This document shows positions 12,001 through 60,928 of a DNA stretch of 64,000 nt, piece after piece. Made by a program: the position numbers and the translations under genes. Where the stretch lies: positions 551,721,117 to 551,785,116 of the forward strand of contig NC_058131.1 in the NCBI RefSeq assembly GCF_016433145.1, given 5' to 3'. This stretch comes from Gracilinanus agilis (Eukaryota). The notes under the pieces were generated by a model. That model worked only from the letters and a program-made list of their open reading frames with translations. It had not been told where the DNA came from and ran no database searches. The first letter of the stretch is position 1; every line of letters starts with the position of its first letter.

Positions 12001-13830
12001 TAATGAAAGAGAAACAATAAAAGAATAACATTTGCGTATTAGTGATATTTCCCAAATATCTATCACTTTGACAACACACTTGACATTCTCCCCTTTTAAA
12101 AAAGTAGCAATACCTTGAGCTTGGGGAGCAGGAAGAGAATTGGAAGTGGTTTCTCTTAATGGAGAAACTGATTCCGAGAGGGGCAGCATCTAAAGAGGAA
12201 AGGGTGATGTTTAGAGGATTGAGTGTAGCACATAGTCCCCATTTCCCTAGTTTCCTTCTCTTACCAATATCCTCTAATGGTACCAAGGAATTCTTTCTTT
12301 CTTACCTCGCCATTAGATCCCTCTTTTAGCAGCTGTTCCAGTGCCTCTGACCGAGGGTGGGAGTTCTGCAGCCAGAATAAACAGAGCACAATGAGAACCT
12401 CCAATGATACTATCCCTAGGAGCCTGATGCCTATCCACTCACAGAGAAAAAGAAGGAACAGAGTGGATGATCTCTCAGGATACAATAAAGAAGGGGGAGA
12501 GGAAGCAGGCTCCATTTTGGAATTCAGTTAGCTTGGTGTCTATAGGGTGGCTTCAAGTTAGGTTAAGTCCCTGAGATCAGAGTTTCCAAGTCCTACTTAT
12601 AAGATCAGTGTCTCACCTCTAGCAGAAGGGTGAGCTCAGTCCGAAGCAATAAAACATCCATAGTGACTGTAGCCACACGATGCCCATCTGGCTCCTCTTG
12701 CCCCTCAGGGAAGCTCAGCCCATCTGGCTGCTCTTCTGTGTATCCATAAAGGCGGAGCACCTCCCGGCCCCCCTGTCAAGAATTCCCAAGTCACTGTCTG
12801 CCCAAGAACCTCTCCCTCCTAATCTCTTTCCTCTAACTAGGATCCGTATGTTGTACCTCATTACTTCTTCCAGAGACCCCAGGGTAATTTGACATTCTCA
12901 TTTCACCCATTCTCCCATGACTAAGTTGTCATTAAACTAATTCACTCTTTTCACAGAACAGGCTATCTATCCCTAGCATAGGTCTAGCTTCTGGCCTAGC
13001 CCAAAACTTCTAACCCTGTTCCAGTTACCATAGCATCCAATTGCCTAGTGTAGTGATGGGCAAACTAAAGCTTGTGGGTCAGAAGCAGCCCAGCCACCCG
13101 ACATTATTCCTAATCTGACGAACACAATTGAATAGGATAAAACAAAACTTTGAAAGAGTTGCCTTAGCATTTCCTTTCCTTTGGCCCCCTCTTTAAAAAG
13201 TTTGCCCATCAGTGGCCTAGTGGCATCCTCCTAGATCCCTTAATACTTCACCTGCACAGCATCCACAGTGCTTCTGAAGACAGGATTATTGAACTTGACC
13301 CCACGCCAGTATCTGGGTCGCTGTGGACTAAGTAGGTTTCGGCCATATTTCTCTAGGATATTCAATGCAGTGGACAGGCTTCGCAAGTACTCACTAGGCT
13401 GCAAAGGAAGGATATGAATTTGGCAAAATATCTGTGAACGCCCCACATTACAATTCCAAAATTCACATCCCTGTTGTCCATCTCCCTACTTCATTTCTCA
13501 ATCCTTTCTATTCTTTCTTCAGGTCCTGACTTTGTTGCCGCCCATTTCCCAAAAATCCTCTCCAAATGTCAGTCCCCTCCTAGTCCATCTCCTTTGAACA
13601 TATTTTGGGTGGTAATACTCCCTCACCTCTCCTCCTTGGGCATTGCTTTGGACTAGTTGGGAGGCATTCAGCTTTTGGTAGCGGGTGGCAAGGGGCAGGG
13701 AATTGTCCAGCAGTCTAAGCAGCTGCTCTGGTGAAAACGACTGTCCAGGATCCTTCCTCAGGGCGCTCACTAGCTCTCCACGGGCAGTCAGAAAGACCAG
13801 CTCTTCTTCCAGCAGCCCTTCCCCTGACAT
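6088..13830 (-). CDS. RNF31: E3 ubiquitin ligase RNF31/HOIP (LUBAC catalytic subunit), 1075 aa: PUB, B-box, ZF/NZF, UBA, RBR, LDD
   Basis: 21 exons: 13627-13830, 13252-13398, 12617-12772, 12306-12365, 12114-12189, 11688-11865, 11141-11537, 10666-10947, 10222-10470, 9800-9982, 9469-9675, 8979-9152, 8796-8894, 8585-8674, 8290-8404, 7978-8096, 7582-7695, 7276-7333, 6611-6707, 6250-6418, 6088-6141. Total 3228 nt, all GT-AG. Catalytic GGCMHFHC intact; ends [14 protein letters not shown]. Confidence 0.98.
13051..13214. mobile_element. hAT (Charlie/OC1-like) MITE in RNF31 intron 2
   Basis: TIRs tagtgatgggcaaact / agtttgcccatcagtg; perfect 8-bp TSD gcctagtg at 13043-13050 and 13215-13222. Confidence 0.88.
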
Positions 13831-14431
13831 CCTGAGGGAAAGGGGGGCGGCAAAGGGCTGGTTCAGGTGGGAGGGGGTGCTCCTTTGTGCCCCCCAAACT
13901 TCGCAGATTTAGTTCACTCATCTCAAGAAACCGAGAGAAGCCTCAGCCTCAGGCTCCTCTTTTGGGGCTCAGGACGTGTTGTCAATGGCTGGGCCAGGCC
14001 AGTCCCTCCATCTCCCTTCTCCATTCCCCACGGCCGCCGCGGCGGGCAGGTGGGTAGGCAAGCCAGGGGCTCTCATCCCGAGCCCCTGGCTTGCCTACCC
14101 GCTCAGGGCTTTGGCCACCCGGGAGTACCCCGAGGAAAGTAGGGATTCAGGACGACTGAATTGGGCTCTCGGGCCGAGGCCGCGTCACGGTCATCCGTGA
14201 CTAGACATCTGGCCCAAGCTGACCTCCCTCAGTCCCTCCATCTCCCGAGGATCATCTCGAGCCAAGCTTACCTCCGCCCCCGCCCTCCCCAACACTCCCA
14301 GAGGCGACGCCTTCCTTCCCCAACCAACCGGCTCGCCCCCTCTCCGGCTCCCCGGCTCACGCTGCAGCGGCAGGACTGTCGGCCAACACCCCGGCAACGT
14401 TTGGATCTCACCCGCAGCCTGGCTCCCGGGC

Positions 14432-18000: not shown

Positions 18001-18394
18001 TCAACTTGTCTATTCCCCTCTGAGGAAACAAGGCACAACTCATGTCCTCCCGGAGATATGACCCAATTTTACCTTTTCTATTCCCAGATGGATTATCGGG
18101 CCTTGGTACATGAACGAGATGAGGCAGCCTATGGGGAACTTCGGACTATAGTGCTGGACCTCCGTTCTTTCTATGTGAGTGAGGGTAAAGACTGGAAAGA
18201 TATAAATAAGGATGATCTAAAAGGAAAGCATGGCAAGGGAAGGGGGAGTTGAAAAGAGGTCAGGGAGGGAGCTTCAGATCCCTGAGCACTACCACTTTGA
18301 CTCATCTATCCAGGCTGAGCTCTATCACATTATCAGCAGCAACCTAGAGAAGATCACCAACCCAAAGGGTGAAGAAAAGCCATCCATGTACTGA
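15083..18394 (+). CDS. PSME2: Proteasome activator subunit 2 (PA28 beta), 239 aa
   Basis: 11 exons: 15083-15130 ([16 protein letters not shown]), 15499-15531, 15930-15992, 16274-16360, 16474-16504, 16599-16696, 16966-17034, 17213-17280, 17674-17728, 18088-18174, 18314-18394 (…[11 protein letters not shown]). Total 720 nt. Confidence 0.98.
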
Positions 18395-18413: not shown

Positions 18414-18419
18414 AATAAA
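18414..18419 (+). terminator. PSME2 poly(A) signal AATAAA
   Basis: 19 nt after the TGA stop. Confidence 0.8.
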
Positions 18420-19297
18420 TGATCTTAACTCTTGTAACAAACTGTGCTAGTTACTTTGTGCTTATCATATCCATTCTGGGGAATTATGGGAGGAGAAGCA
18501 TCAGATACTGCCTCAAGAGCAGTATGACTATGCATTATTTCATTGTCTAGGGATTCCCCACCTTGAAGCACAGTCAGTTCTGGGAAACTAGAATGCTGTG
18601 AGTGTTTTCACATTCCTACAATCGACCTTTTAGTCCAGCATGAGAGTCACAGTCGTGGACCTCTCCTACCATGGCCAAGAAAGTCGGGAGTCTAGTCATC
18701 CTATATATTGGGGATTATGTTATATTAGGATAAATAATCCTAGAGTCTCCAGGTTGAAAGGGGACTTTAAAGGTTATATGTTCCCGTGGCATCCTCTATA
18801 TCACATATTTGAAAAGTTATCTAAAAAATGTAAAGAGTTATCCAGCTGGTACCTGAAAATCTCTACTGAGTAGAAACTCACTACTTTCCAAAGCAGTCCA
18901 TTCCACTTTGGGACAGCTGTAAGGGGCAAGAAATGTGTTTTATGTTTCAGTATCTTTCCTTGTTATTTTTACTCATTTATTTGTTTATTTTGCAACTGGG
19001 TAAGGTTGGGGTGAGGGAGGATATTGAAGGGGGAAACCAGGAAAGACAGAAATGCTTGAGGGCTGGGAGACTGGGAGGAGAGATCTTCTTAGGGCATTCT
19101 TGTTATTTAAAATACATTGAGACACATATTTGCATTGTAGTTAAACTTGTTTTAGATAGTACCTAAACTCTTAACTATAATTATTTTTAAACCCATAACT
19201 TTATAGACCATCAAGTCAAAAGTTAAAATATAACAATACCATAAATAAATCATGACCATAATTACTTCCAAAGCTGCCCCTTTATTTTATGGGAGTT

Positions 19298-19500
19298 TTT
19301 TTTTTTTAAACCTTAGTTCTGTCTTAGAATCAATACTGTTGTATTGGTTCCAAGGCAGATGGACAGTAAGGGCTAGACAATGGGGTTTAAGTGACTTGCC
19401 TGGTGTCACACAGCTAGGAAGTGTCTGAGGTCAGATTTGAACCCAAGACCTCCCTTCTCTAGGCTTGACCCTCAATCCACTAAGCAACTTAACTACTCCC
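19298..19500 (-). mobile_element. SINE1_Mdo-like with TSD
   Basis: TSD attt(t/c)atgggagtt on both sides. Confidence 0.88.
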
Positions 19501-19519
19501 ATTTCATGGGAGTTCTTGA

Positions 19520-21270
19520 AAGGAATGACCACAGATCTCAAATTGTATTCCAAAGTAGTCATCAAAACAATCTGGTCCTGGCTAGGAAAAGAATGGTAGG
19601 CCAGTGAAATAGATGAGGTATGAAATATCTAGTAATAGATGACCAGAATAATTTAGTGTTTGATAAGCCAAACAATCCAAACTTTTGGCAGAAGAATTCA
19701 CTGTTTGACAAAAACTGTTGGGAAAATTAGAAAATGGTATAGCAGATACTAGGGAGAGACTTAACATCTCACACTGGATACCAAGATAAGGTCAATATGG
19801 GAACATGATTTAGATATAAAGGATGATATTATAATCAAACTAGGGGAGCATGGAATAATTTACCTGTCAGACCTATGGATAAGGAAAGAATTTATGACCA
19901 AATGAGAGCATTATAGATGTAAAATGGATAATTTTGATTATATTAAAAAGTTGTATAAATAAAACCAACCGAGATTAGAAGGAAGGCAGAAACCTGGGAA
20001 AAAATTTTGACAGCAAGTATCTAATAATGGTCTCATTTCTCAAATATACAGACAACTAAGTCAAATTTATAAAAATATGTCATTCTCCAATTAATAAATT
20101 ATCAAAGAATATGAATAGGTAGTTTTCAAATTGAGAAATCAAAGTCATCTGTAGTCATGAAAAAGTACTCTAAATCACTCTTGATTAGAGAAATGCAATT
20201 AAAACAAGGTACCACTTCACACATTAGATTGGCCAATCTGACAGAAAAGGAAAATGATAAATGTTAGAGGAGTTACAGGAAAATTGGGACACTAATGCAC
20301 TGTTTGTGGAGTTGTAATCTGAAAATAAGAAAAAAAAATTGTGAGATAGAACAGGATTTAGAATTGGAAGGTGACTAGAGATCAGATAGTTTAGACTATC
20401 TGATCTCTAGTCACCTTCCAATTCTAAATCCCTGTCATTTAATGAACACTTAGAAAAGGACCAAAAGTTATACAGTAAATGGCAGTGTCAAAATTAAAAT
20501 TGAGGCCTTCTGACTTAAAATCTAGTGTTATTTCTACTACCATTTGAGAAAATAAGAAAAATAGGAGGTGGGGAATATGAGTTATAGCAAGAGAGAACAA
20601 TTTAGAACTGTGCCCAAAGAGCTCTAAAACTGTATACCCTTTCATCCAGCAATACCACAATTAGATCTGTATCCCAAAGAGATTTTTAAAAAGGGAGGGA
20701 GGGCTATTTGTAAAAAAAAATGTTTATTGCAGGTCTTTTTTGTGGTAGCAAAGAATTGGATATTGAGGGGTTTTCCATCAGTTGGGGAATAGCTGAACAA
20801 TGGTGAATGGTATATGGTTGTAATGGAATACTATTGTGACATGAGAAATGAGGAGGAGGAGGATTTTCAAAAAATCTGGACTTACTTGAACTGATTCAAA
20901 GTGAAGTGAGCAGAACCAAAGAACACTGGACATAGTAACTAATATTTTTTGATGAATAGCTGTGAATGGCTGTTATTCTCAGCAATACTGTGATCTAAGA
21001 CAATCCCAGAGACTCATGGTAAAAAATGCCATCTGCCTTCAGAGAAAGAACTGATAGAGTCTGAATGAAGAACAAAACATACTATATTTCACACTTTCTT
21101 TTTGTTTGTTTGTGATCTCTTCCACAAAATTACTACTATCAGAAAATGTTTTACATGATTGCACATGTAAAAATCTCTATCATTACTTACCATCTCAGGA
21201 AGTGGGGAGAGAGGGAGGAAGGAAGGAGAGAATTTCAAACTCAAATTAATTTTTTAAAATTGTTTTTACA
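19520..21270 (+). mobile_element. Old L1 ORF2/3' fragment, interrupted by a MIR-type SINE at about 20335-20547
   Basis: L1 motifs (aaactgttgggaaaatt, ctgtatcccaaagagat, ggaatactattgtg); the insert is flanked by the direct repeat gaaaataagaaaaa at 20321 and 20548. Confidence 0.8.
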
Positions 21271-22299
21271 AGTAATTGAGGGAAAATAATATTTTTAGCC
21301 CTTACCTTCCATCTTGAAATACCATGTATTGGTTCTAAGGCAGAAAAGAGGTAAGGGCTTTAGTAAATCAATTGCTTTAGTACTCTTGGGTAACAGTGCC
21401 AACACGAGAGAGGTCAGGATCATGTTTGTTTTATTGATGCCTTTTGTTTTTATGTCATATTTCCAAATAGATCTCCCCTTTACCCTCCTAGCCAGTGAAG
21501 ATGTTTTCCTTTTACCAAAGATTAAAAGAAAAAAACAAACACTTCAGTAAAACCAATAGGTATATCAGCATATGCAACATTCTATATCCTCCACTTTGCT
21601 AACATAAGGAAGAAGATGGATTTTCTTATCTTTTCTCAGGGGACAAACTAATATGTGTATATTTAATTGTATTGATATCTTTCATCTTTATATCACTTTA
21701 AATTTCCCAATATCTCCCTCCTTTCCCCAGAGAGCCATCCATTATAACAATTAGTAAAAAAGAAATGTAACATATATGCTTTGGCCCCCCTCTCTCAAAG
21801 CTAGGTGGGCTACATCTCTTCTCAGGATATAATGAGCAAAAGATGTAATGACTAAGGAAACAAAAGTTTGATCTTCTGAGCACATCAATTTATTAAACAA
21901 CACTTACCAATTGCCTGATATTTTAGAGCCAAGCCCCTTCCTCAATTTAGGGATTGACCCCAAAATTCTCCGAATACACTGGAGAAATAGACTTTTACAC
22001 TTAAAAGCAATAATAAAAAAAAAAAAAAGACCAATTAATTACAAGGAAACAGTAGAACACTAGGTAATTTGATTTCTAATTGGATGAAAGACTAGGGACT
22101 TCCCAAATTGGGAGGGGGAGAGTGAACAAGTACAATTCCCTGAATTTAGGAAATGAGGTGTTCCACTTCTCTCAAGTGTCTGTATACAATTAAAGGAACA
22201 TAGAAATAATAACTGACTGATCAGTATGGGGTCAGTTTTCAAATAAGACATCTAGGTTGCTTGAAATGTACAATTATGAGAAAACTCCTTACATCAGTG

Positions 22300-33784: not shown

Positions 33785-35252
33785 ATGGGAGAAGTGGAGA
33801 TCTCCGCCCGGGCCTACGTGAAGATGTGCCTCCATGCTGCCCGCTACCCGCACGCAGCTGTCAACGGGTTGCTGCTGGCCCAGGCGCCCCAGGCGGGGGG
33901 CTGCCTCTGCCTCAGTGACTGTGTGCCCCTCTTCCACAGCCATCTGGCCCTTTCTGTCATGCTGGAGGTCGCCCTTAACCAGGTACAGCCCCCTCCCCCA
34001 GTCTTGGAAATAAATGCCCACTCACTGTCTCCAGGCCTTGGCTTGGCAGGCCCTATCCCCTTTTGCAGCTGTTCATTGGCAGTGCCATCAGCAAAAAAAC
34101 TAATGGGCCCTTTCTCATGGCAGGTAGATGTGTGGGGTGCCCAGGGCAGTTTGGTGGTAGCTGGGTACTACCATGCCAATGCCTCGATGAATGACCAGAG
34201 GTGAGTGAGGGAGCTGGCAGTGGAAGATGGGGTGGGGATTTATTCTAAGGCAGGGGTTCTGAACTTTTCCTGATATCAGGGACCCCCTCTCAGAAAAATG
34301 GTTTGTTGCCTCCATTCATAATTGAAGGAAATGCTAAATTTCAGTTAGAGGTTAGTGAAAATAAAGATGTATTTTTTTCCTTCCAAGTTCACAGGGGGGT
34401 GCATGGACCCCATGTTAAGAAGCTCTGCTCTAAGGTAAATGTTTGCTAGGGTTAAACCCAACCAGTAGTTTTTCCTCTGATTGGACTAGTCTCACCTCAC
34501 CCCCATAGGGGATGAAGAACACCTATTAGCCTTAAATTAATAAATTCCTGCAAATATAGTGTTTGTTCTGCTGCTTGGGATCCTTTAATGACTATGTTCT
34601 TCCTAGCCCTGGTCCCCTTGCCCTGAAAATTGCTGGACGAATTTCGGAATTTTTCCCTGGGGCAGTGCTTATCATGGTAAGGCTGAGGATTGAGGGGCAG
34701 GGAGTTGGGGAGAAAAGAAAGTAGAAAGAGAACCCTGGAACTCTTAACAATCCTTACCTCAACCTCCCAGTTGGATAATCGGAAATTGGTGCCCCAGACT
34801 CGAGTGCCGCCTATCATTGTCTTGGAGGCTCGTGATCGACGCTGGGTCCCCAAAGACAAGAACCTGTGAGTACCTCTATTCTTTTGCCTCAGCACTTCTT
34901 ACCATGTTCTTTGCTTCTAAGTAGCAGAGAAATTAAGTTCAATCTAGGCTCTTGAACCCAAGTTTCTGTTCCTGTCTTTATTCCCTGAGTAAGTCCTAGA
35001 CCTAAACAGTCTGCTTTTGGTCCCAGGTTTTCAGGCTGAATTGAATATTTCTTTTTTGGTGGGTATTTCAGGGTGATGTGGCGGGATTGGGAAGAGTCAA
35101 GGCAGCTCCTTCAAGCACTGCTGGAAGGCCGGGCCCACCGGCTACTTGTTGACTTTGATGCCCATCTTGATGACATCCGTCGTGACTGGACAAACCAACA
35201 ACTCAATACTGAAATTTCTCAATGGGTTGCTGCTGCCAATGGGGCTGCCTGA
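33785..35252 (+). CDS. EMC9: ER membrane protein complex subunit 9, 206 aa
   Basis: Exons 33785-33982 (MGEVEISARAYVKMCLHAARYPHAAVNG), 34124-34200, 34607-34676, 34771-34865, 35072-35252. Total 621 nt; MPN-like EMC8/9 motifs GYYHAN and LVDFDAHLDD. Confidence 0.97.
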
Positions 35253-58519: not shown

Positions 58520-58716
58520 TTTTTAAACCCTTACCTTCTGTCTTGGAACCAATACATGTATTGGTTCCAAGGCAGAAGAGTGGTAAGAGCTAGGCAATGG
58601 AGGTCAAGTGACTTGCCTAGGGTCACACAGCTAGGAAGTATCTGAGGCTAGATTTGAACCTAGGACCTCCTGTCTTTAGGCCTGGCTCTCAATCCACTGA
58701 GCTACCCAGCTGCCCC
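58520..58716 (-). mobile_element. Full-length SINE1_Mdo-like
   Basis: TSD ttgaatg(c/t)attt. Confidence 0.88.
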
Positions 58717-59800: not shown

Positions 59801-60928
59801 ATGAATGGAGGTATTAGAGATGTTTATGTAACAGACAAGAGACTTGAGATATGAACAGGAAGAGATCATAGAATCATACATTTAGAGCTTGAGGAGAGCT
59901 AGTTGGTTAACTTGTCCAGCCCTCTTTTTTCATTGTCAAGGAGAGGGAGGTTGTCATACATGTGCTAAGGATTGGAGTCATGAATTAGAACCTAGTTCTT
60001 ATGCCTCCAAATGTTGCATTCTTTCCCCTGGAACATACTGCCTCTGAGTCTTCTCCATAGGAAGTGGAAGAGGACTTGTTTAAAGATCATTGCAAGAGGA
60101 ATCAGGATTTTGTTGAGTTCTGGACACTTCTATCTTAAGATAGAAAAGAATGGGAGGTTGGAAGGTTGGAGGAAAAGGTGGAGTACTGAGGAAGAGTGTC
60201 AGAGGAAGAAGTCTTAAGGGTTTATATGGCTCAGTCTTAGAAGTCAAGGGTTTAGTTTTGGGGGCTGACTGTGGGTTCTACAACTTAGGATCATAGATTT
60301 AGATTTGGAAGGGACCTTAAGAAGTCATAAAAATCCAAGCCTTTATTTTACTGATGAGGACTTACATGATTTAAGGTCACACAGCAAATGGTAGAGCAGG
60401 GATTCAAACCTGAGTCCCCTCCAAATCTAAATCTAGCTATTTCTGAATGTATGACTTTTGTGTTGGAAGGAGGAAGGTTGGACAGTGCTCTCTTCCCTCC
60501 TTCCCACTTATGCTCCCCAAGAGCAGTGTGGAATACTAGATATCTCATTCATGCAACCAGGTAGGAGCTTTCTACAGGCTGGATCGACTCCATTCTACAG
60601 AGACTTCAATAGGGATAAATTGAGAGGTTGGGGGAAGAGGATCATAAAACTGATGAAGGAATGCTGGAGATAGTAATACCTTTTTGCATTGAAAGTTAAT
60701 GAAAGCTATACAAATGTGATGGAAAATAAATGATAACTTATTATTAAATCAACAGCTTAGATGGTATATAATAGGGCTACAGTCTGGTTTGTGACTGTAT
60801 AATAGGTGTTAGTCAAATCAAAGTAGCTCTTATTTCTTGTAACTCTTTCTCTGTAGTTCCCCTGTTGAAAGGAGGTAGCTCATATGCTCTTTTTTCGTGT
60901 ATGTACCTCTGCCCCCTGTGTTCCCAGA

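What the first reader, a model, noticed from the sequence alone, without database searches (positions are those of the whole stretch)
20354..20431. Perfect 37-bp fold-back hairpin (4-nt loop) born inside an old MIR-type SINE
20354-20390 (ggatttagaattggaaggtgactagagatcagatagt) is the exact reverse complement of 20395-20431, with loop ttag. The host SINE is highly diverged yet the arms are identical, so the inverted copy is recent or homogenised, consistent with replication template switching, a described route to de novo miRNA hairpins. The 78-nt size suits a pre-miRNA or endo-siRNA, and a stem over 30 bp could engage PKR/ADAR. It sits 1.9 kb downstream of the IFN-inducible PSME2 poly(A) site, on the read-through path. 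It could also extrude as a cruciform.
Basis: partly seen in the sequence, partly recalled or inferred. Interest (0 to 1): 0.72.

Follow-up and report, generated by a model that had tools for sequence, protein, structure and literature searches.

The report
Young copy-error hairpin in a SINE
A perfect 37-base-pair hairpin between two genes of an opossum-like genome is real, but it is a recent DNA copying error that wrote a stretch of an old mobile element backwards, a known and common kind of mutation, and nothing shows that it does anything.

Summary
Bases 20354-20390 and 20395-20431 are exact reverse complements around a TTAG loop. It is the longest short-range inverted repeat in the 64-kb window.

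The host is a diverged MIR-type SINE nested in an L1. It lies in the PSME2-EMC9 intergenic spacer, 1.9 kb past the PSME2 poly(A) signal.

Public read contigs settle origin and polarity:
- A run of the window's own species carries the 3'-arm/flank junction with no mismatch at single-copy depth.
- A relative about 7% diverged has one contig that runs from 20390 to 20432 with only 6 other letters between. That is the single-arm state.

So 41 nt (loop plus inverted arm) replaced 6 nt in one lineage. This is a "3-2-1-4" template-switch mutation, a described class (PMC5453318). Whether replication or break repair did it cannot be told.

The functional ideas have no support:
- No RNA run holds the locus.
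- No Rfam family reaches its threshold.
- The 4-nt loop does not fit the apical loop of 10 nt or more preferred in pri-miRNAs.
- Only about 0.9% of suitable primate TSM hairpins are annotated miRNAs (PMC10710096).

The scan has already noted several such hairpins elsewhere in this genome. Verdict: real, ordinary, low interest.

The parts
20354..20390 (+). 5' arm. This is the original head of the MIR-type SINE in sense orientation, and it served as the template of the inverted copy.
   Evidence: It aligns to the head of the MIR-type copy at 60280-60445. It is present in the relative's contig (X7 record 30, piece 20248-20390).
20391..20394 (+). Loop TTAG. It is part of the 41-nt derived segment.
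   Evidence: The relative's contig skips it; that contig has 6 other letters in place of 20391-20431.
20395..20431 (+). 3' arm. This is the derived, exact reverse-complement copy of 20354-20390.
   Evidence: It is absent from organism C's contig (X7 record 30). Its junction with the 3' flank is present with 0 mismatches in X1 record 6 (20402-20629, depth 29.9).
20335..20547 (+). Host MIR-type (CORE-type) SINE copy, highly diverged and A+T-rich. Its ends are approximate.
   Evidence: With 20391-20431 removed it aligns over head, core and tail to the copy at 60280-60445. The score is 63 against 22.9 +/- 4.2 for shuffles, 50 with the fold-back left in, and 48 with only the 3' arm kept.
20321..20334 (+). 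Left copy of the 14-nt direct repeat GAAAATAAGAAAAA that brackets the SINE; a candidate target-site duplication.
   Evidence: the exact string occurs only at 20321-20334 and 20548-20561.
20548..20561 (+). Right copy of the 14-nt direct repeat.
20318..20593 (+). Segment inserted into an L1 3' region. Other L1 copies have 19 nt here instead.
   Evidence: joint 20317->20594 with 19 letters between, at depth 555, in X7. These are L1 paralogues without the insert. L1 ORF2-end sequence flanks both sides.
18230..18394 (+). Last coding exon of PSME2 (ends ...[11 protein letters not shown], then stop). AATAAA follows at 18414-18419.
   Evidence: Pfam PA28_C positions 122-143 of 145.

Best explanation
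The hairpin is a young, lineage-specific template-switch (fold-back copying) mutation, and it is most likely neutral. A MIR-type SINE had long been sitting inside an L1 in the PSME2-EMC9 spacer and had already diverged. In the lineage of the window's species, a DNA polymerase reached the end of the SINE head (about 20390-20394). It then left its template and copied the 37 nt just made (or the same strand of the sister duplex) backwards, from 20390 down to 20354. It returned to the original template at 20432. The result replaced 6 ancestral letters with 41 (TTAG plus the inverted arm) and made a perfect 37-bp inverted repeat in one step. In the four-point model this is switch-point order 3-2-1-4.

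Shown: the structure, the derived state in this species and the single-arm state in a relative.

Inferred: that a single event did it, that it arose at a replication fork and not during break repair, and that it has no function.
For: - The arms are exact reverse complements with a 4-nt spacer.
- Both arms carry the same private differences from another family member, so the copy postdates the SINE's decay.
- Removing 20391-20431 restores a colinear alignment to the MIR-type copy at 60280. The score is 63 against 50 with the fold-back and 48 with only the 3' arm; shuffles give 22.9 +/- 4.2. In that alignment the host has a 7-nt gap close to the junction, just before the TAGT that ends the 5' arm. 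The relative's 6 extra letters lie at the junction itself.
- In organism C, one 451-nt contig at single-copy depth (35.7) covers 20248-20390, then 6 letters, then 20432-20752. It has 33 mismatches, about 7%, which matches the divergence implied by the word share. It spans both L1/SINE borders, so it is the orthologue.
- In organism A, a 233-nt contig at depth 29.9 (neighbouring contigs 25.7-32.2) holds 30 nt of the inverted arm plus 198 nt of flank with 0 mismatches. It begins inside the arm, as a k=31 graph must at a 37-bp inverted repeat.
- The event type and size are described. Type 3-2-1-4 and its mirror case made up 31% of high-confidence human-chimp events (PMC5453318). Each human genome has thousands of TSM patterns, up to 318 bp long (PMC9435742).
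- Zero arm differences fits a young age. If the event dated from the A-C split, about 2.7 differences would be expected, with P(0) about 0.07 (my arithmetic).
- Other template-switch hairpins were noted in this same genome (unchecked leads).
Against: - The six letters in the relative were not printed, so microhomologies at the switch points could not be examined.
- The state in organisms B and D is unknown.
- The X1 run may come from the individual that was assembled, so it is not independent proof of fixation in the species.
- The loop-spanning contig was not among the pieces listed.
- Absence of function is inferred from priors and from missing evidence, not shown. No true RNA or small-RNA data could be examined.
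Confidence: 0.85

Rival explanations
1. The product is the same but the enzymology differs. A double-strand break in the SINE was repaired by alternative end joining. The resected 3' end snapped back on itself, a polymerase such as Pol theta copied 37 nt, and the extended end was joined to the other side. This is a templated 'snap-back' insertion, not a replication-fork switch. It is a variant of the best explanation, not exclusive of its main claim of a recent, neutral fold-back copy.
For: The change is a small deletion (6 nt) plus a templated reverse-complement insertion copied from the immediately adjacent sequence. That is the scar type described for Pol theta-mediated end joining and SD-MMEJ (PMC4912351, PMC5068794 and PMC5728401, found; abstracts only read).
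Against: From my own knowledge, not checked here, templated insertions by end joining are usually shorter than 37-41 nt. The four-point model makes no assumption about mechanism and fits equally well. Sequence alone cannot separate the two.
Confidence: 0.25
2. The hairpin is a newborn functional RNA element. It would be transcribed by read-through from interferon-inducible PSME2, or from the nested repeats. It would then be processed into small RNAs (miRNA or endo-siRNA), or act as a 37-bp dsRNA ligand for ADAR or PKR.
For: The stem length of 37 bp is close to the preferred 35 bp (PMC10710096). Both strands fold very stably. The hairpin lies on the same strand and downstream of PSME2. Template switching has produced real miRNAs in primates.
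Against: - No listed run holding the locus is on record as RNA.
- The 'RNA?' run X15 covers unique spacer and repeats as evenly as the DNA runs do.
- No Rfam family reaches its gathering score. The best, mir-2329, scores 48 bits against 90, a generic hairpin match.
- The apical loop is 4 nt against a preferred 10 nt or more.
- The locus is intergenic, about 13 kb upstream of EMC9, with three further + strand AATAAA at 19244, 19958 and 20093 before the hairpin.
- It is absent in a close relative, so there is no conservation.
- Only 0.9% of suitable TSM hairpins in human genic regions are annotated miRNAs.
Confidence: 0.04
3. It is an assembly or sequencing artefact: a fold-back chimera or mis-join that does not exist in the animal's DNA.
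For: Fold-back chimeras occur in long-read libraries. The best-matching run may be the assembly's own sample. The loop-spanning contig was not listed.
Against: Short-read k-mer contigs of X1 contain the inverted-arm/flank junction (20402-20629) with 0 mismatches at depth 29.9, the same as neighbouring single-copy contigs. A 31-mer at about 30x is in the reads, not made by an assembler. Library fold-back chimeras mirror whole reads, not 37 nt. The contig breaks exactly where a true inverted repeat longer than 31 nt forces a break.
Confidence: 0.03
4. Two SINE copies inserted head to head, with the arms later homogenised by gene conversion.
For: Inverted SINE heads do occur in this window (60294-60315 and 60414-60435).
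Against: Only 37 nt are duplicated, and there is no second SINE body. Both arms share every private substitution and indel relative to another family copy. The relative has a single arm at the orthologous site.
Confidence: 0.01

Closest known systems
Short-range template-switch mutations (TSMs), four-point model type 3-2-1-4 / 1-4-3-2 (Loytynoja & Goldman 2017, PMC5453318; Loytynoja 2022, PMC9435742)
   Same: A single event writes a reverse-complement copy of adjacent sequence, replaces a few ancestral bases and creates a perfect inverted repeat. The outgroup lacks it. The 37-nt copy is well inside the reported range (up to 318 bp).
   Different: This is a marsupial-like genome and not a primate, and the site is inside a SINE nested in an L1. 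The published polymorphism screens masked repeats. The switch-point microhomologies could not be read here.
TSM-born primate miRNA genes (Monttinen, Frilander & Loytynoja 2023, PMC10710096)
   Same: The birth mechanism is the same and the stem length is near 35 bp.
   Different: Those loci have expression support, apical loops that fit Drosha/DGCR8 and mostly intronic positions. This one has a 4-nt loop, is intergenic, has no RNA evidence and matches no known family.
Snap-back templated insertions of Pol theta-mediated end joining / SD-MMEJ (PMC4912351, PMC5728401)
   Same: A deletion plus an insertion templated in reverse complement from the flanking strand.
   Different: Those are repair of a break, not a fork error, and their inserts are usually shorter (my own knowledge). 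The two cannot be told apart from this sequence.
Quasipalindrome correction in bacteria (Ripley model, as cited in PMC5453318)
   Same: Intra- or inter-strand template switching yields a perfect inverted repeat.
   Different: The classical model needs a pre-existing near-perfect inverted repeat. Here the relative has no second arm at all, so the repeat was created and not corrected.

Membership tests
Template-switch mutation (four-point model) | A fragment that is the exact reverse complement of nearby sequence (the 2->3 fragment) | tested here: met
   20395-20431 is the reverse complement of 20354-20390, 37 of 37.
Template-switch mutation (four-point model) | The parent or outgroup sequence lacks the inverted fragment, so the state is derived | tested here: met
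   Organism C's contig joins 20390 to 20432 with 6 other letters between (X7 record 30). Only one outgroup was seen; B and D were not resolved.
Template-switch mutation (four-point model) | One switch event explains the difference more simply than substitutions plus indels | tested here: met
   A 41-nt segment replaces 6 nt, and 37 of the 41 are explained exactly by one inverted copy. No formal model comparison (fpa) was run.
Template-switch mutation (four-point model) | Permitted switch-point order, with point 4 after point 1 | tested here: met
   The order on the reference is 3 (20354) < 2 (20390) < 1 (about 20390-20394) < 4 (20432). This is type 3-2-1-4, an observed type.
Template-switch mutation (four-point model) | Arises at a replication fork and not in break repair | not testable with these tools
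   The model itself is agnostic on this point. Sequence alone cannot decide.
Canonical animal miRNA precursor | Stem of about 35 bp | tested here: met
   37 perfect pairs, plus a few pairs at the base. The criterion is as stated in PMC10710096.
Canonical animal miRNA precursor | Unstructured apical loop of 10 nt or more | tested here: not met
   The loop is 4 nt.
Canonical animal miRNA precursor | The locus is transcribed and yields discrete 5p/3p small RNAs of about 22 nt | not testable with these tools
   No listed run holding the locus is on record as RNA. Contigs cannot show RNA ends, and X15 behaves like DNA.
Canonical animal miRNA precursor | Match to a curated miRNA family | tested here: not met
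   The best Rfam hit, mir-2329, scores 48.3 bits against a gathering score of 90. Nothing passes its threshold in the whole window.
MIR-type (CORE) SINE, as host element | Colinear similarity to another family copy over head, core and tail | tested here: met
   The single-arm version aligns to 60280-60445 with a score of 63, against 22.9 +/- 4.2 for shuffles. The head motif occurs 4 times in the window against 0.34 expected. The subfamily was not determined, and the resemblance to the MIR consensus is from memory only.
MIR-type (CORE) SINE, as host element | Insertion flanked by a target-site duplication | tested here: inconclusive
   The 14-nt exact direct repeat lies at 20321-20334 and 20548-20561. 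About 18-30 nt of unassigned sequence separate the right copy from the point where L1 similarity resumes.

The most novel reading that the evidence does not exclude
The fold-back is a newborn, species-specific dsRNA gene. PSME2 read-through under interferon would carry the 37-bp perfect hairpin into RNA, where Dicer makes endo-siRNAs or a proto-miRNA from it, or ADAR and PKR sense it. That would tie a brand-new small RNA to the interferon response.
Probability: 0.03. Interest if true: 0.6.

Novelty: new member of a known kind. Interest (0 to 1): 0.15.

Why it matters
This is a clean case, polarised by an outgroup, of a perfect hairpin created in one step by template switching. It lies inside a transposable element of a marsupial-like genome, a compartment that the published human screens masked out. 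With the other cases the scan has noted in this genome, it could feed a census of how often such raw material for new RNA hairpins arises outside primates. On its own it changes nothing known. It also warns that perfect stems in old repeats need no selection or 'homogenisation' to explain them.

Tried and rejected
- BLAST of the element against the window found no second copy at E<1e-3, so in-window paralogues could not serve as an ancestor proxy. A looser search found only one good family member, at 60280.
- MAFFT on the split pieces misplaced the head. This was replaced by pairwise local alignment.
- An Rfam E-value scan gave only sub-threshold generic hairpin hits: mir-2329, MIR7504, mir-962 and a Streptococcus sRNA. 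The gathering scan of the whole window gave nothing.
- The one run guessed to be RNA (X15, organism B) was laid to test read-through. Its depth over unique spacer and over repeats tracks the DNA runs, so I rejected it as RNA evidence.
- Setting min_likeness to 85 brought in more than 100,000 L1 and SINE paralogue contigs per run. They flooded the tables, so organism B's state at the hairpin and the six ancestral letters were not displayed.
- Head-to-head double SINE insertion and arm homogenisation were considered and rejected (see rivals).
- The bacterial, viral and metagenome collections and the big protein searches were not used, because they cannot bear on an animal intergenic repeat.

Full report
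**1. The observation**

Bases 20354-20390 are the exact reverse complement of 20395-20431, with TTAG between them.

| Fold | Energy (kcal/mol) | z-score |
|---|---|---|
| RNA, + strand | -68.9 | -14.3 |
| RNA, - strand | -68.0 | -16.1 |
| DNA, + strand | -43 | -15.1 |

No shuffle in any of the three runs folds as well. A scan of all 64 kb for inverted repeats with arms within 200 nt puts this one first. The next perfect one has 21-nt arms. Chance cannot produce it. The window contains no N.

**2. The surroundings**

- Upstream on the + strand lie the last two coding exons of PSME2. They read ...[18 protein letters not shown]... and [26 protein letters not shown]-stop at 18394, and match Pfam PA28_C up to profile position 143 of 145. 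AATAAA follows at 18414-18419.
- RNF31 exon 1 (PUB_1 domain) lies on the - strand at 13519-13830.
- The next gene downstream is EMC9 on the + strand, with exons at 34687-34866 and 35040-35249 (UPF0172). PSME1 follows on the - strand.
- The hairpin is thus intergenic, in a 15-kb A+T-rich spacer full of repeats.
- Three further + strand AATAAA hexamers (19244, 19958, 20093) lie between the PSME2 poly(A) site and the hairpin.

**3. The host element**

- The flanks (…cactaatgcactgtttgtggagttgtaa… and …caatttagaactgtgcccaaagagctctaaaactgtataccc…) are L1 ORF2-end sequence (recognised from my own knowledge).
- In a relative's reads, high-copy L1 paralogues join 20317 to 20594 with 19 other letters between. 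So 20318-20593 is an insertion into that L1.
- A 14-nt exact direct repeat, GAAAATAAGAAAAA, brackets the element at 20321-20334 and 20548-20561.
- The inserted element is a MIR-type SINE. With 20391-20431 taken out, it aligns colinearly over head, core and tail with the copy at 60280-60445. The score is 63 against 22.9 +/- 4.2 for shuffles. It drops to 50 with the fold-back left in and to 48 if only the 3' arm is kept.
- Hence the 5' arm is the native SINE head, and the loop plus 3' arm is the addition.
- Both arms carry the same private substitutions and indels relative to the other copy, so the duplication came after most of the SINE's decay.

**4. Reads**

The best holder of the 2-kb stretch is run X1 of organism A, with 0.54 of the sampled words. 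Runs of organisms B, C and D hold 0.05-0.09, which implies relatives about 5-7% diverged. All runs are Logan contigs. Two records decide the matter.

- *X1 record 6.* This 233-nt contig at depth 29.9 lies on 20402-20629 with 0 mismatches. It holds 30 nt of the inverted arm joined to the 3' flank. It begins inside the arm, exactly where a k=31 graph must break at a 37-bp inverted repeat. Neighbouring single-copy contigs have depth 25.7-32.2. The junction is therefore in the reads at full depth and is not an assembler's join.
- *X7 record 30 (organism C).* This 451-nt contig at depth 35.7 lies on 20248-20390 (record 1-130) and on 20432-20752 (record 137-451). It is one contig that crosses both L1/SINE borders, has 33 mismatches (about 7%) and has only six letters where the window has 41. 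This is the orthologous locus in the single-arm state.

The local alignment to the other MIR-type copy shows a 7-nt gap in the host just before the TAGT that ends the 5' arm. This is close to, but not exactly at, the junction where the relative has its six extra letters.

The state in organism B was not among the rows shown, and neither were the six letters. Both read tools were then at their caps.

**5. What it is**

A 41-nt segment, of which 37 nt are an exact inverted copy of the immediately preceding 37 nt, replaced 6 nt in the lineage of the window's species.

- In the four-point model the switch points lie in the order 3 (20354), 2 (20390), 1 (about 20390-20394), 4 (20432).
- This is type 3-2-1-4. 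Together with its mirror case it made up 31% of high-confidence human-chimp events, and it is described as a one-step route to hairpins (PMC5453318).
- Human genomes carry thousands of such patterns each, up to 318 bp long (PMC9435742).
- The model does not say whether a replication fork or break repair is responsible. A Pol theta-type snap-back insertion would leave the same scar (papers found). I cannot separate the two.

On age: had the event happened at the A-C split, about 2.7 differences between the arms would be expected (37 nt x about 7.4%), giving P(0) of about 0.07. So it is probably clearly younger than the split. No 'homogenisation' is needed.

**6. Function**

Nothing supports one.

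- No listed run holding the locus is on record as RNA.
- Run X15, guessed to be RNA, covers unique spacer and repeats in the same proportions as the DNA runs. I treat it as DNA.
- Rfam gives only sub-threshold, structure-driven hits, and nothing passes a gathering score in the whole window.
- The stem length suits a pri-miRNA, but the 4-nt loop does not fit the preferred unstructured apical loop of 10 nt or more (PMC10710096).
- In that study only 0.9% (57 of 6,054) of suitable TSM hairpins in human genic regions are annotated miRNAs, and the successful ones are enriched in introns. This hairpin is intergenic.
- A 37-bp duplex is long enough in principle for ADAR or PKR binding (established knowledge), and for cruciform extrusion. 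Both remain possibilities only.

**7. Comparison and novelty**

This is a new instance of a known mutation class. The scan itself has noted at least five other template-switch hairpins elsewhere in this same genome. Two were followed up with the same verdict (s1-153817, s1-153909). I treat these as unchecked leads. The only mild point of interest is that the event lies inside a SINE nested in an L1, a compartment excluded from the published human polymorphism screens.

**8. Verdict**

- The origin by template switching is supported and is polarised by an outgroup.
- The functional readings are unsupported and unlikely, at about 3-4%.
- Interest is low.

Noticed in passing
window 14052-14100: A perfect 21-bp G+C-rich inverted repeat with a 7-nt loop. 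It lies between RNF31 exon 1 (13519-13830, - strand) and the start of PSME2, so in their shared promoter zone. It could be another template-switch product or a dimeric factor site.
   Followed up: no
window 58535-58578: A 26-nt, 96% palindrome. Its half matches the loose-end consensus (..TATTGGTTCCAAGGCAGAAG..) of a very high-copy SINE seen at 19366 in the read tables. It therefore looks like a fold-back at a SINE head.
   Followed up: no
window 60294-60315 and 60414-60435: The head and tail of a single MIR-type SINE copy are 95% complementary over 22 nt with a 98-nt spacer, giving an imperfect long-loop hairpin within one element.
   Followed up: partly
window 19258-19460 and 21278-21378: Fragments of an extremely high-copy SINE (summed contig depth up to about 1e7). 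Contigs in all four runs join about 19337-19340 to about 21327-21332, and a 19-nt, 89% inverted match links 19357-19375 to 21296-21314. Related repeat pieces therefore bracket the L1 block that holds the hairpin.
   Followed up: no
window 13519-39000: The gene order is RNF31(-), PSME2(+), a 15-kb repeat-filled spacer, EMC9(+), PSME1(-). From memory this matches the human chromosome 14 cluster. The PSME2-EMC9 spacer here is swollen by L1 and SINE insertions.
   Followed up: partly
run X15 laid on window 18450-21450: The run labelled 'RNA?' shows even depth over unique spacer and the same repeat proportions as the DNA runs. It is probably DNA and should not be used as expression evidence.
   Followed up: partly
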